Assembly: GCF_006345805.1 (NCBI RefSeq)
Contig: NC_042997.1
Coordinates: 166,284,001-166,348,000 of the forward strand
Direction of reading: 5' to 3'
From: Octopus sinensis
Lineage: Eukaryota
DNA length: 64,000 nucleotides
Part shown: one piece after another, positions 6,344-42,982 of the stretch
How the letters are laid out: every line of letters starts with the position of its first letter
Position numbering within the stretch: position 1 is the first letter of the stretch
Position numbers and translations under genes: made by a program
The notes under the pieces: model-generated
Database searches by the model: none
What the model was told of the DNA's origin: nothing
The model's input: the letters and a program-made list of their open reading frames with translations, nothing else

Positions 6344-6992
6344 ATGTTCATCAACACAATAATTATTGGCCTCCTTATCTTCTTGCAAACTTTCCACAAA
6401 GGCTGGGATACAGATGCAGCAGCCCACAATCCCATTATAAAGAAGAAAAGTAAATCAGCTTCCGTTAGGAGCACTAAGTGTGCGTACACAATAGTGGTTA
6501 ATGAAGTAGATGCTTCTCAGTGTCCAGTGATGACACAACCAGTGCAGTCGGACCATACAGTAAATGGAAAAACTCAGAAAAAATCAACAGTGTCCTCAAG
6601 TGAGGTGCATGGTTTAACTTCAAAGATCCATAGTGTAGAAACTACCCTGTTAGGTGAAATTGTCAAAAACCGCGAACTAAACACAACACTGACTCAGCAT
6701 AGTATCATGCTAGAAAAGGCAGAGGACCGGTTCCTGAAGTACCAAAACAACTTCACGTCGCTTTTCCGAGCCATCATGTTTATGGAACAGAAAATCCGAA
6801 AACAGAAGGAAATTAGTCGCAACTTGGACAACAAGCTGTCTAACATAATGCTTGATGTTGTGGAAGTGAACAATGTACTTTCACGGAAAACTCCGGGCCC
6901 AGGAACAAGTCTCAAAGACAAACAAATCAAAGTAGAAAGTGCAGCACATGTAAGACAATGTGGAATTACTGACGACACAGAAATTTTCCAAG
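6344..6992 (+). CDS. Angiopoietin-like / fibrinogen-related (FReD) secreted protein, coding exon 1 (signal peptide + coiled coil)
   Basis: ATG at 6344 with a hydrophobic signal peptide (MFINTIIIGLLIFLQTF...). KCAYTIVV motif resembles the ANGPTL1/2 N-terminal KCAYTFLV motif. A heptad-like region follows (LTSKIHSVETTLL...LDNKLSNIMLDVVEVNNVL). Donor CAAG|GTAAGC at 6992/6993 is phase 1, matching the exon 2 acceptor. Confidence 0.85.
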
Positions 6993-8152
6993 GTAAGCTA
7001 TGTTTCTATGCTGGGTGCAACGATGCATTTACATGTGGCTGTGATGACAAGTATACATACATGCTTGCAGCTAACACTACATATAAACACACAATTACAT
7101 GTAATAGGGATGACTAGTGCATACATGTGTACATACATACATACACACACACACACACATATATATATATACATATATACATACATATATATACATGCAA
7201 ATATATGAATATATGCACATACATCTACACACACACACACACACACATTAGAAACAAACTAAAAAATGACTCCTTGACACCAGAATGTTGGATAAAATAG
7301 TATGTACACGTATATATTTCTCAATACATTGTTTTAGAATAATTAGAGTGCTCGCTATTCTGAAGCAGAGCTGAAATTCTGTCATATGATATGCATGCTA
7401 ATTACAGTAAGAAGATTAAATACTGATATTGTGATAAAGTGATACTTTTAGTTGAAAATTTAATTTAATTTTACATATGTACATCCTTAGATTACATTAT
7501 ACACTCGCATTGTCATTATCATCTTTTAACACCCAAGCTCCATGCCAGCATGGATTAGATGGTTTAAGAGGAACCCATGGAGCAAGGACTGCATCATTAC
7601 CATGTTCCAATATGTGTGAGTGTGTGTATACATAATACATATACATACACACACACACACACACACACATGCACACACAACAACATTAATAATATATTAA
7701 GATCATCATCAATATTTTATGTCTGCTTTCCATGTTGTCATGGATTGAACCTTAATGACAGTCCAAGTAAGTTCTTATTGAGACTTACTGCCCTCCTACA
7801 AATATCGGAGGACCATGACTCACTCTTATATTTCAATTTCTGGCTTGTTTCTGTGGTTGGACGTCCTTCTCACACATACACACATTGCCACAATGACCAA
7901 TATTTACAGAATATTTAGTTACATCTGGCAATAATAGATAATGAGCACATGTATTCATTCATTCCGCATGACTGAGAATCAAAGTGTGTGTATGCATGTG
8001 TGTGTCTTGTGCACATGCACAAGATGGCACATGTGTATACATATGTACACACTTATGTTCATATAAAGAAGTTACCTACTTCAATTTCCAATTTCTTAAG
8101 ATTTTTTTCATTAATGAACACTAAAATTATGTGCAAGTGCACACACACACGT

Positions 8153-8462
8153 GGAGGCGCAATGGCCCAGTGGTTAGGGCAGCAGACTCGCGGTCGGAGG
8201 ATCGCGGTTTAGATTCCCAGACCGGGCGTTGTGTGTGTATATTGACTGAAAACACCTAAAGCTCCACGAGGCTCCAGCAGGGGCGGAGGGCGACCCCTGT
8301 TGTACTCTTTCATCCCAACTTTCTCTCACTCTTTCCTTCCTGTTTCTTGAGTAACGCTGCGATGGACTGGCGTCCCATCCAGCTGGGGGAGAACACAAAT
8401 GCCATAGAAACTGGGAAACAGGGCCCATGAGTCTGGCTAGGCTTTAAAAGGGCGAAAAAAAA
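8153..8462 (+). mobile_element. tRNA-derived SINE, head H1 + tail X
   Basis: GGAGGCGCAATGGCCCAGTGGTTAGGGCAGC (A box) ... GGTTTAGATTCCC (B-box-like); tail ...GGCTAGGCTTTAAAAGGGCG. Confidence 0.85.
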
Positions 8463-9163
8463 AGGCACACACACACACACACATACCACACACCTGAGCA
8501 TGCATTTACAAGAAGAAGAAAAAAGAAACAAACAAATATAGAGTAGTAACGCAATATTCCAGTTCCTTCTTTTTAAATTTTGTGATATATTCAAATGAGG
8601 GAGTATTTTTGTTTCTTTTTTTAATTTTCAAACAATATTATAAATTGATAGTGAATATGTGTATGTGTCTGTAAAACCAGCTGCATAACATCAAGAGAAC
8701 CAGAAGAAAGAAGAGGAGGTGAAAAAGATAACAAAAAAAAAGTTAGCATGAAAAGAAAAGAAGACAATTGTTACTTAGGAGTGAGGTTGTTGCTAAGTTG
8801 TTATCTAACAACAATGTCAGCACTGGTTGAGTAGATTAACTTTTTTGTTAAAGAAATTAGATATATCCACACAAAATTTCATTACTTTTAAATTGGAAAA
8901 CAATTTTATATATAAATCTATTTTTTGTTGACGAATGTCATGTTTGAAACAATTTTTTGTTGAGATACATCAAATTTACAGAGGCAATATGACTTGGAGA
9001 AAATATAAATTCTATTTTTTGGTAGAACAAAATTACTAGAATTACCCTCAAAAATTTTATTTCACAGTTAAAGGGTTAATAATGATTAAAAACATCTCCA
9101 GTACTAGCCATCCAAATTCTTTTTCAGACATGATGTATCACCAGTGGATTCTTAATATATATA

Positions 9164-41702: not shown

Positions 41703-42177
41703 TAGGCGCAGGAGTGGCTGTGTGGTAAGTAGCTTGCTAACCAACCACATGGTTCTGGGTTCAATCCCACTGCGTGGCATCTTGGGCAAGTGTCTTCTGC
41801 TATAGCCCCGGGCTGACCAATGCCTTGTGAGTGGATTTGGTAGACGGAAACTGAAAGAAGCCTGTCGTATATATATATATATATATATATATATATATAT
41901 ATATTATATATATATATATATATATATATATATATATATATAAATGTATGTGTGTGTGTTTGTGTGTCTGTGTTTGTCCCCTAGCATTGCTTGACAACCG
42001 ATGCTGGTGTGTGTTTACATCCCCGTCACTTAGCGGTTCGGCAAAAGAGACCGATATAATAAGTACTGGGCTTACAAAAAATAAGTCTCGGGGTCGATTT
42101 GCTCGACTAAAGGCGGTGCTCCAGCATGGCCGCAGTCAAATGACTGAAACAAGTAAAAGAGTAAAGAGTAAAAGAGT
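41703..42177 (+). mobile_element. tRNA-derived SINE family 1, young full-length copy
   Basis: A/B-box-like head, core, central (TA)n(TG)n and tail with GAGTAAAA repeats; many CpGs retained. Confidence 0.9.
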
Positions 42178-42816
42178 ATTAGCACATTCAAAAACTATAC
42201 TTAGCTAGGTGCACTTGGAAGATTTTATTTTTAGTACTTTTTGACCCCTCTATATTTGTACTTGTATATGTATTTGTAGCAGAATTCACCTGGGGTAGGT
42301 TGAGCCAGTTCCAACCATAGAATACACAACAATGTGAACAGAAGCAGACCACACTAAATAATCACAGACATTCATAAATCAATATGAAACAGGTTTTATG
42401 ATTCCATGTCCTACCACAGCAACCATGAAACTGTCAAGTTGAAAGCTGACCTATTTTTCACCTAGGTGGTCAAAGGCAACAACGATGGAACTTATGACAG
42501 AAACAAATTAGCAAGCACACTTTTATAAATGACAAAAATTATTATTATTACTCTTGCTTTTCTTTTTCTACATTATCAACATACGTCAATACAATAATCT
42601 TTCTTTTTCACACACAATTTTCAAGTGAACAAAACAAAAGAACAAAAGACATGGTATTATGTTGTTTCCTGAAACCAGATACCTCACCCTAGGTAGCTTA
42701 AGTGATATATTCAATCCACACTTAAGTACTGAGAAGTGCATCCAACAATAAAGAAACTATATGTGTAATTATTACACAAAGTTCATAGATAATGAGATTT
42801 AAAAATTAATACTTAC

Positions 42817-42982
42817 CGGGCATTAATTTTTCTATTTTTACTGTCTTCTTTATTATAAGCAGTAATTACTAGAATTTTCTTTAGCTCTACCATTTCATTG
42901 AGAATATTGGCAGTAACTGTAGGGTATGCGAGGTAACGTTCTTTAACTACCCAGTCATCAAGTTCAGTCATTGATGGTTCAC
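42817..42982 (-). CDS. TMX3: TMX3 internal exon (166 nt, phase 1 to 2)
   Basis: Poly-T + GAAACAG|(G)EPSMTELDDWVVKERYLAYPTVTANILNEMVELKKILVITAYNKEDSKNRKINA(R)|GTAAGT. Aligns with human DLSSWINRERFQNYLAMDGFLLYELGDTGKLVALAVIDEKNTSVEHTR. Phase matches the previous exon. Confidence 0.82.

What the first reader, a model, noticed from the sequence alone, without database searches (positions are those of the whole stretch)
6344..42817. Angiopoietin-like FReD gene apparently nested antisense inside a TMX3 intron
The last TMX3 exon I can find ends in phase 2 at 42817 on the minus strand. I could not find the expected next exons (human LKSIIQEVA..., DFQFGHM..., TM domain) anywhere from 42816 to 1. The whole + strand FReD gene (6344-38125) therefore appears to sit in a TMX3 intron longer than 42 kb. 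Vertebrate ANGPTL genes are known to be nested antisense in other genes (ANGPTL1/RALGPS2, ANGPTL2/RALGPS1, ANGPTL3/DOCK7, ANGPTL7/MTOR), so a different host in a mollusc would be an independent case. The host is an ER disulfide isomerase and the guest is a Cys-rich secreted protein. Any functional link between them is speculation.
Basis: partly seen in the sequence, partly recalled or inferred. Interest (0 to 1): 0.7.

Follow-up and report, generated by a model that had tools for sequence, protein, structure and literature searches.

The report
Fibrinogen-domain gene nested inside TMX3
An octopus gene for a secreted fibrinogen-domain protein lies backwards inside one very long intron of the housekeeping gene TMX3, and the same gene sits in the same intron in snails, scallops, lamp shells, ribbon worms and annelids, so the arrangement is over half a billion years old.

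Summary

**Guest gene.** The + strand carries a two-coding-exon gene (6344-6992 and 37494-38125) for a 426-aa protein with a signal peptide, a long helix and a FReD domain. It is 97% identical to O. bimaculoides 'techylectin-5B'.

**Host gene.** The - strand carries four TMX3 exons: 58854-58740, 49721-49644, 45600-45534 and 42982-42817. All have AG/GT splice sites. They are 100% identical to residues 123-263 of Octopus vulgaris TMX3-like. Nothing in the window encodes TMX3 residues 265-446.

**Public annotation.** TMX3 spans about 123 kb, and the FReD gene occupies a 31,782-bp span inside it, the same length as in the window.

**Conservation.** The same guest lies antisense in the same phase-2 TMX3 intron in Argonauta, Lingula, Tubulanus and Owenia. 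It also lies inside TMX3 in Haliotis and Pecten. The orthologous intron in a shark relative is 0.86 kb and empty.

**Verdict.** This is a new, deeply conserved member of a known kind: a nested antisense gene pair, like vertebrate ANGPTL guests or TIMP in synapsin. Passive entrapment is the likeliest reason it persists. Functional coupling to TMX3 is untested. "Angiopoietin-like" holds for domain architecture only.

The parts
6344..6992 (+). FReD gene coding exon 1: signal peptide, Cys-rich N-terminal motif, long helix; ends in phase 1 before donor GTAAGC
   Evidence: exon boundary conserved in seven species
6993..37493 (+). FReD intron (30.5 kb), full of microsatellites, SINE-like and degraded LINE pieces; no TMX3 exon inside
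37494..38125 (+). FReD gene coding exon 2: whole fibrinogen-related domain, including the stop codon
   Evidence: Pfam PF00147 E=2.6e-57; PDB matches to ANGPTL2, ficolins and FIBCD1
38126..38281 (+). Probable FReD 3' UTR with AATAAA at 38217-38222 and 38261-38266
   Evidence: Conserved with Argonauta up to 38281; sequence read. Inferred, no RNA data.
42817..42982 (-). TMX3 exon, residues 209-264 (GEPSMTELDDW...KINAR); starts in phase 1, ends in phase 2. Last TMX3 exon in the window and upstream border of the host intron.
   Evidence: 96% aa identity in O. bimaculoides, 80% in Argonauta
45534..45600 (-). TMX3 exon, residues 187-209 (HVRMTRSPTVLVFKDNLYDEYF-G)
49644..49721 (-). TMX3 exon, residues 161-186 (KKFVLTARRQLIQSYFYVGESRVLPP)
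58740..58854 (-). TMX3 exon, residues 122-160 (DPINTITSEGKF...DIILY)
1..42816 (-). Part of the TMX3 host intron that lies in the window; the intron runs off the left edge. Total length is more than 42.8 kb and at most about 61 kb.
   Evidence: no downstream exon in the window; TMX3 CDS range ends about 25 kb beyond the FReD start; mapping inferred from equal FReD span
41105..41165 (.). Conserved non-coding block of about 61 bp in the host intron, between the FReD 3' end and the TMX3 exon; function unknown
   Evidence: 88.5% identity to the colinear Argonauta L002 26527-26587; no RNA-structure signal

Best explanation
The window comes from Octopus sinensis or O. vulgaris and shows a true host/guest pair.

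The host is TMX3, a membrane-anchored ER thiol-disulfide oxidoreductase. It is transcribed right to left across the whole window.

The guest is a self-contained gene for a secreted protein with a signal peptide, a long helix and a fibrinogen-related domain. It has two coding exons and is transcribed left to right. It lies wholly inside the TMX3 intron that follows the exon ending '...KINAR' (phase 2) and precedes the small exon 'YEKMSIELALNQKRKFHN'.

The two genes are separate transcription units. The TMX3 pre-mRNA reads through the guest in antisense and splices it out. The guest presumably uses its own promoter and poly(A) signals on the other strand (inferred).

The pair was already in place in the common ancestor of molluscs, brachiopods, nemerteans and annelids. 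The most likely reason for its persistence is passive entrapment. Once a gene sits inside an intron of an indispensable gene, only a rearrangement with both breakpoints inside that intron can free it without destroying the host. The pair is therefore lost far more slowly than ordinary neighbours are.
For: Shown:
- Gene models and splice sites in the window.
- Identity to annotated proteins.
- Gene calls in O. sinensis/vulgaris: TMX3 CDS range 123.5 or 120.9 kb, with the FReD gene occupying 31,782 bp inside it, the same length as window 6344-38125.
- The same nesting called in O. bimaculoides, Argonauta, Haliotis, Pecten, Lingula, Tubulanus and Owenia.
- The same intron shown by locating the flanking TMX3 exons: Argonauta (28517 / 6502), Lingula (17605 / 3709), Tubulanus (13019 / about 8240) and Owenia (15542 / 6648).
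- The guest's own intron position, just before 'DC' of the FReD domain, is conserved.
- The orthologous intron in Callorhinchus TMX3 is 0.86 kb with no FReD.
- Purifying selection on the guest, dN/dS 0.14.

For passive retention (inferred):
- Host intron size varies from about 5 kb to more than 95 kb, yet the arrangement holds.
- Between Octopus and Argonauta almost nothing but exons is conserved in the intron; the exception is one block of about 61 bp.
- Other local synteny is also kept (prefoldin head-to-head with TMX3).
- There is precedent in TIMP within synapsin (PMC2825198).
Against: - The left end of the host intron and the remaining TMX3 exons are outside the window. For Octopus the closure of the nest rests on public gene calls, not on sequence I could read.
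- There are no transcript data. The guest's UTR exons and promoter, and possible alternative TMX3 exons, are unknown.
- Passive entrapment is an argument from pattern. The conserved ~61-bp element and the 170-bp spacing between the guest stop codon and a TMX3 exon in Tubulanus could reflect regulatory interplay.
- Sampling outside Spiralia is one vertebrate TMX3 and one weakly related holothurian FReD.
Confidence: 0.82

Rival explanations
1. The nest is kept because the genes are functionally or regulatorily coupled. Possibilities are shared enhancers in the intron, transcriptional interference between converging polymerases, antisense RNA effects, or co-expression of an ER disulfide isomerase with a Cys-rich secreted client.
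For: - The arrangement is kept in the same intron and same orientation in four phyla.
- One colinear ~61-bp non-coding block is conserved between Octopus and Argonauta.
- In Tubulanus the guest stop codon is 170 bp from a TMX3 exon, so the transcripts probably overlap.
- The guest has invariant cysteines.
- In humans some ANGPTL guests are inversely expressed with their hosts (PMC6371847).
Against: - No expression data.
- Apart from that one block, no non-exonic conservation over about 30 kb of intron.
- Vertebrate TMX3 functions with an empty intron.
- In humans other ANGPTL guest/host pairs show no correlation (PMC6371847).
- A paralogue of the guest exists outside any called host.
Confidence: 0.15
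2. The genes are interleaved rather than nested: unannotated or alternative TMX3 exons lie within the FReD gene or between it and 42816.
For: Only that small or alternative exons cannot be excluded without RNA data. Some species have TMX3 isoforms of different length (Lineus isoforms X2 and X3).
Against: - Every residue of the annotated 446-aa protein is accounted for outside 1-42816.
- In Argonauta, Lingula, Tubulanus and Owenia the consecutive coding exons flank the guest with nothing between them.
Confidence: 0.04
3. The nest is older than Spiralia. It was bilaterian and was lost in vertebrates, so the tendency of vertebrate ANGPTL genes to be nested and this case share an origin.
For: - The host intron position itself is shared with a vertebrate.
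- The best vertebrate match of the guest is ANGPTL7 and the best PDB match is ANGPTL2.
- Five human ANGPT/ANGPTL genes are intronic guests (PMC6371847).
Against: - Full-length (90% or more coverage) relatives were found only in spiralians.
- The vertebrate hosts are different genes.
- The Callorhinchus intron is empty and the best holothurian relative is not in TMX3.
Confidence: 0.1
4. It is an artefact: assembly chimera, mis-annotation or a dead TMX3 copy.
For: None found.
Against: - Eight independent assemblies give the same picture.
- The exons have intact frames and canonical splice sites.
- They are conserved at 93-96% aa identity against about 91% neutral nucleotide identity with O. bimaculoides.
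Confidence: 0.01

Closest known systems
Vertebrate ANGPT/ANGPTL genes embedded antisense in introns of large host genes: ANGPTL3/DOCK7, ANGPTL8/DOCK6, ANGPTL1/RALGPS2, ANGPTL2/RALGPS1 and ANGPT2/MCPH1 (PMC6371847); ANGPTL7/MTOR from my own knowledge
   Same: A small gene for a secreted protein with a signal peptide, a coiled coil and a FReD domain lies antisense in one intron of a large, broadly needed host gene. The FReD domain's best PDB match is ANGPTL2.
   Different: The host is TMX3, which is not a host in vertebrates; the Callorhinchus intron is empty. Orthology of the guest to any ANGPTL is not established. The guest's own intron is huge (30.5 kb), so the guest is not small in genomic span.
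TIMP nested antisense in a synapsin intron, conserved across Metazoa (PMC2825198; Pohar et al. 1999, cited there)
   Same: A guest/host pair kept in the same relative place and in reverse orientation over hundreds of millions of years, with additional non-nested paralogues of the guest.
   Different: The gene families differ. SYN-TIMP spans cnidarians to humans, whereas TMX3-FReD has so far been seen only in Spiralia.
Tachylectin-5 and ficolin-type FReD lectins (the automatic name 'techylectin-5B')
   Same: FReD fold, the Ca-site DxDxD motif and the conserved disulfide pair.
   Different: It has a long N-terminal helix instead of none (tachylectin-5) or a collagen stalk (ficolins). The residue after the second Cys of the binding-site loop is an invariant Trp, where ficolin-1 has His. 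An acetyl-group lectin function is therefore doubtful.

Membership tests
TMX3 (PDI family, TMX subgroup) | Sequence orthology to TMX3 across the non-catalytic Thioredoxin_6 region | tested here: met
   The window exons equal residues 123-263 of O. vulgaris TMX3-like P0077. The best hits of the TMX3-based query are TMX3 from molluscs to vertebrates.
TMX3 (PDI family, TMX subgroup) | N-terminal catalytic thioredoxin domain with CGHC, a C-terminal transmembrane segment and a tail | tested here: inconclusive
   Present in P0077 (WCGHC; LFLLMFGLPTVIISVVCY), but those exons lie outside the window on both sides.
TMX3 (PDI family, TMX subgroup) | Shared intron positions with vertebrate TMX3 | tested here: met
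   The intron after '...EEHT/S' and before 'LKSITQEVA...' in Callorhinchus matches the octopus intron after '...KINAR' and before 'YEKMSIEL...'.
Fibrinogen-related domain (FReD) proteins | Fibrinogen_C domain above Pfam threshold | tested here: met
   PF00147, E=2.6e-57, 194.6 bits against a cut-off of 22.
Angiopoietin-like (ANGPTL) family | Architecture: signal peptide, N-terminal coiled coil, C-terminal FReD | tested here: met
   The AlphaFold model of the 97%-identical P0001 shows helix 3-17, a single 77-residue helix 90-166 and a FReD domain at 215-423. Mean pLDDT is 61, so this supports topology only.
Angiopoietin-like (ANGPTL) family | Orthology to a vertebrate ANGPTL clade | tested here: inconclusive
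   PDB E-values are close: ANGPTL2 1e-52, ficolin-1 8e-52, FIBCD1 3e-51, TL5A 1e-50. The best vertebrate hit, ANGPTL7, has 37% identity over 64% of the query. No phylogeny was run.
Nested (intronic, antisense) gene pair | The guest lies wholly between two consecutive host exons, on the opposite strand, with no host exon inside the guest | tested here: met
   In the window, the upstream host exon is at 42817 and there is no host exon in 1-42816. Closure on the left comes from gene calls. In Argonauta it was seen directly, with exons at 28517 and 6502 around guest 10001-22722.
Nested (intronic, antisense) gene pair | Both genes are expressed as separate transcripts | not testable with these tools
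   No RNA-seq access. Support is indirect only: purifying selection on the guest and conservation of both genes.
Tachylectin-5/ficolin acetyl-binding lectins | Aromatic/His binding-site residues (TL-5A Tyr210, His220, Tyr236, Tyr248, as listed in PMC11741071) | tested here: inconclusive
   Only the position after the second loop Cys was read. It is Trp385, invariant in 19 spiralian sequences, against His in ficolin-1. The other three positions were not mapped.

The most novel reading that the evidence does not exclude
The TMX3-FReD nest is a functionally locked unit of spiralian genomes. On this reading, transcription of the ER oxidoreductase through the intron gates or tunes expression of the secreted, Cys-rich FReD protein (or the reverse). 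The repeated capture of coiled-coil FReD genes inside housekeeping-gene introns in both spiralians and vertebrates would then reflect a family-wide regulatory strategy rather than accident.
Probability: 0.1. Interest if true: 0.7.

Novelty: new member of a known kind. Interest (0 to 1): 0.5.

Why it matters
Nested antisense genes are common, but pairs kept in the same intron across phyla are few; TIMP in synapsin is the textbook case. This pair adds a clean second example. It has a well-defined insertion point and an empty orthologous intron in a vertebrate. Its natural size range runs from a host intron of about 5 kb (Tubulanus) to more than 95 kb (Pecten). That range makes it a usable system for asking whether such nests persist by entrapment or by regulatory coupling.

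It also gives a positional marker for identifying one conserved spiralian coiled-coil FReD orthogroup among the hundreds of lineage-specific mollusc FREPs. It adds a fifth independent host to the puzzling habit of angiopoietin-like genes of living in introns. I found no paper describing it, although the gene models are in public annotation.

Tried and rejected
1. A word-index protein search with concatenated window TMX3 exons found nothing. A whole-library phmmer with the 54-aa exon gave only three weak, uninformative hits. The octopus TMX3 protein was recovered only with a chimeric Lingula/Octopus/Argonauta query.

Its 'GYPTI' hit at 51646 was out of order and proved spurious, because P0077 has no exon there.

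4. Candidate small-exon hits such as 27332-27288 lie in a LINE-derived repeat and were dropped.

5. The 'YEKMSI' 6-mer at 31328 is on the + strand and I take it to be chance.

6. The best holothurian FReD relative is not inside TMX3. The Dimorphilus TMX3 was not on record. The distribution outside Spiralia therefore remains open.

7. The scallop CfFREP (PMC11741071) was considered as a functional proxy but has a different layout (FBG at 104-322 of 398 aa), so it is not the orthologue.

8. Rfam and tRNA scans of the window found nothing. The conserved ~61-bp block shows no RNA-fold signal.
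Full report
**What the window is.** The sequence is AT-rich and packed with microsatellites and transposon debris. It aligns colinearly at about 91% nucleotide identity to Octopus bimaculoides chromosome CM046601.1. The TMX3 exons it carries are 100% identical to 'TMX3-like [Octopus vulgaris]' (P0077). That exact protein is called in two assemblies, GCA_006345805.1 and GCA_951406725.2. 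In GCA_006345805.1, which I recall as O. sinensis, the FReD gene occupies 31,782 bp, the same as window 6344-38125. The window is therefore O. sinensis or O. vulgaris, most likely that assembly (inference).

**The guest gene.** An ORF starts at 6344 and meets a donor CAAG|GTAAGC, so the last exon base is 6992 (phase 1). An acceptor TTTCAG| precedes 37494, from where the frame runs to a stop at 38125.
- The spliced product is 426 aa.
- It matches the 426-aa O. bimaculoides 'techylectin-5B' at 97% identity and 100% coverage, and the 426-aa Argonauta protein at 88%.
- The second exon is a complete Fibrinogen_C domain (E=2.6e-57).
- An AlphaFold model of the O. bimaculoides orthologue was built on 19 homologues. 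Mean pLDDT is 61, so I use it for topology only. It shows a signal-peptide helix, one 77-residue helix (90-166) and the globular domain.
- Full-length relatives (90% or more coverage, 46-55% identity) occur in gastropods, bivalves, a brachiopod, a nemertean and an annelid. Outside Spiralia only the FReD half matches.
- The orthogroup shares an N-terminal KCxYTxVVNExDxSxCP motif, the helix, a VESxxxVRxCGIT linker and invariant cysteines.
- dN/dS against O. bimaculoides is 0.14, with dS 0.09. The gene is under purifying selection.
- AATAAA signals lie at 38217 and 38261, and conservation with Argonauta runs to 38281. This suggests a short 3' UTR (inferred).

**The host exons.** With the O. vulgaris TMX3-like protein in hand, tblastn finds four minus-strand exons at 100% identity. 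I fixed their borders by exact matching:

| Exon (window, - strand) | TMX3 residues |
|---|---|
| 58854-58740 | 122-160 |
| 49721-49644 | 161-186 |
| 45600-45534 | 187-209 |
| 42982-42817 | 209-264 |

- Each exon has an AG acceptor and a GT donor.
- The catalytic thioredoxin exons (residues 1-121) and everything after residue 264 are absent from the window. tblastn (word size 2, hits with E<1 examined) gave no such hit and no exact 6-mer was found. The one exception, 'YEKMSI' at 31328, is on the wrong strand.

**Closing the nest.** Public gene calls give TMX3 a CDS range of 123.5 kb (GCA_006345805.1) or 120.9 kb (GCA_951406725.2). In the former the 426-aa Fibrinogen_C gene lies at 66.7-98.5 kb of that range on the opposite strand.
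- Mapping the window onto those coordinates uses the equal FReD span and is an inference.
- On that mapping, the TMX3 stop lies about 18.7 kb left of window position 1, and the start lies about 40.8 kb right of position 64000.
- The host intron is therefore longer than 42.8 kb and at most about 61 kb.
- In O. bimaculoides the 452-aa Thioredoxin+Thioredoxin_6 gene runs off both ends of the 53-kb locus that holds the FReD gene. No downstream TMX3 exon occurs within 10 kb left of the guest.

**Conservation.** I looked up the guest's orthologues one by one. In each case the guest lies antisense inside a 445-498-aa Thioredoxin+Thioredoxin_6 gene. The species are Argonauta hians, Haliotis asinina, Pecten maximus, Lingula anatina (brachiopod), Tubulanus polymorphus (nemertean) and Owenia fusiformis (annelid).

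Where the locus was large enough I located the flanking host exons:

| Species (locus) | Upstream host exon ends | Guest gene | Next host exon starts (peptide) |
|---|---|---|---|
| Argonauta (L002) | 28517 (...KVNAR) | 10001-22722 | 6502 (YEKMSVELALKQRHKFH) |
| Lingula (L005) | 17605 (...TKHNR) | 10001-15948 | 3709 (VKEVVKTLALRKNSDINK) |
| Tubulanus (L006) | 13019 (...QVNSR) | 10001-12849 | about 8240 (CKEMLDILAKQKREKYHE) |
| Owenia (L007) | 15542 (...AKHDR) | 10001-14295 | 6648 (KEQVRMMAVNQRSKYHK) |

- It is the same phase-2 intron in all four species, and the same as in the window.
- In Haliotis and Pecten no TMX3 exon falls within the 52-kb and 95-kb loci, so the host intron is even larger there.
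- The guest's own intron, just before the 'DC' that opens the FReD domain, is also shared.
- In the holocephalan Callorhinchus the orthologous TMX3 intron (after ...SSEEHT/S, before LKSITQEVA...) is 0.86 kb. The locus has no FReD similarity and no nested gene call.
- The best holothurian relative of the guest (35% identity, FReD half only) is not in TMX3.

The simplest reading is that the guest entered this pre-existing intron no later than the last common ancestor of these four spiralian phyla. An older origin followed by loss is not excluded.

**How it works and why it persists.**
- Shown: there are two intact, conserved genes on opposite strands, one inside a single intron of the other.
- Inferred: the TMX3 pre-mRNA is transcribed through the guest and the intron is spliced out, while the guest uses its own promoter and poly(A) signals.
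- For persistence I favour passive entrapment. Separating the pair without killing TMX3 needs two breakpoints inside the same intron. This explains retention over intron sizes from about 5 kb to more than 95 kb.
- It also fits the near absence of conserved non-coding sequence between Octopus and Argonauta. Only exons align uniquely and colinearly, plus one block of about 61 bp at 41105-41165.
- The classic parallel is TIMP in synapsin, conserved across Metazoa (PMC2825198).
- Regulatory coupling remains possible. In Tubulanus the guest stop codon is only 170 bp from a TMX3 exon, so the mature transcripts probably overlap. In humans ANGPTL3/DOCK7 and ANGPTL8/DOCK6 are inversely expressed in liver, whereas ANGPTL1/RALGPS2 and ANGPTL2/RALGPS1 show no association (PMC6371847).

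**Comparison with what is known.**
- The guest has the angiopoietin/ANGPTL/FGL architecture, and its best solved-structure match is ANGPTL2. Ficolin-1, FIBCD1 and tachylectin-5A score within two orders of magnitude of it. Membership in the ANGPTL clade is therefore unproven.
- The automatic name 'techylectin-5B' is also weak. Tachylectin-5 lacks the helix. The residue after the second binding-loop cysteine is an invariant Trp, where ficolin-1 has His.
- The host is TMX3 by sequence, domain content and shared intron positions.
- The pair is a new member of a known kind of arrangement. It has a host not used in vertebrates.
- Full-text searches found no paper linking TMX3 with a nested gene, microsynteny or FReD genes. 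The gene models themselves are public.

**Verdict.** It extends from 'a mollusc case' to a pan-spiralian, same-intron nest.
- Interest is moderate (0.5). This is a tidy, ancient and apparently undescribed example, not a new principle.
- The main gaps are transcript evidence, the left-flank exons, sampling outside Spiralia, and any test of coupling.

Noticed in passing
window 60453-63575 (+), with arrays at 59455-60300 and 63659-64000: Uninterrupted 1040-aa ORF with endonuclease/exonuclease/phosphatase, reverse-transcriptase and PHD/C1-like zinc-finger hits. It looks like an intact non-LTR (LINE) retrotransposon inside a TMX3 intron, antisense to TMX3. It is flanked by a 162-bp x5.2 tandem array upstream and a 159-bp array downstream that runs off the window. 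ORFs resembling its C-terminal part lie in the FReD intron (e.g. 27144-27503).
   Followed up: partly
window 41105-41165; Argonauta L002 26527-26587: A ~61-bp non-coding block is 88.5% identical between Octopus and Argonauta and colinear, lying between the FReD 3' end and the TMX3 exon. It is the only unique non-exonic conservation found. It shows no RNA-fold signal and no Rfam hit. It could be an enhancer, a splicing element or a cryptic exon.
   Followed up: partly
O. sinensis/vulgaris TMX3 locus; L005 22335-24075; L006 15684-16416: A 133-134-aa Prefoldin_2 gene sits head-to-head within about 200 bp of the TMX3 start in Octopus, Lingula and Tubulanus. This is a second conserved neighbour and probably a shared bidirectional promoter.
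   Followed up: no
L007 (Owenia fusiformis) 2553-3993: A 95-bp unit is repeated 15.1 times at 95% identity. Each copy encodes the TMX3 transmembrane segment (VWATSIWLGLLVFGLPSLIISVVCYAL). It could be a tandemly amplified exon array or an assembly artefact, and may explain the longer 498-aa product.
   Followed up: partly
L010 (O. bimaculoides CM046601.1, 156.77-156.84 Mb): A paralogue of the guest (P0035: 457 aa, 38% identity, same two-exon structure with a 42-kb intron) lies roughly 140-180 kb from the nested copy on the same chromosome. It is not inside any called host and no TMX3 exons are nearby. Argonauta has a counterpart on the same contig.
   Followed up: partly
L006 (Tubulanus) 12849-13019: The guest's stop codon is only 170 bp from the donor site of the flanking TMX3 exon. 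The guest 3' UTR therefore probably overlaps that exon in antisense in this compact genome.
   Followed up: no
window, e.g. 9235-9325, 41795-41867, 44206-44269, 57725-57767: There are many copies of a short interspersed repeat, translating in one frame as ...HAVGLNPEPCGW.... Copies are also present in Argonauta (L002 about 20220-20313), so this is an old SINE-like family.
   Followed up: no
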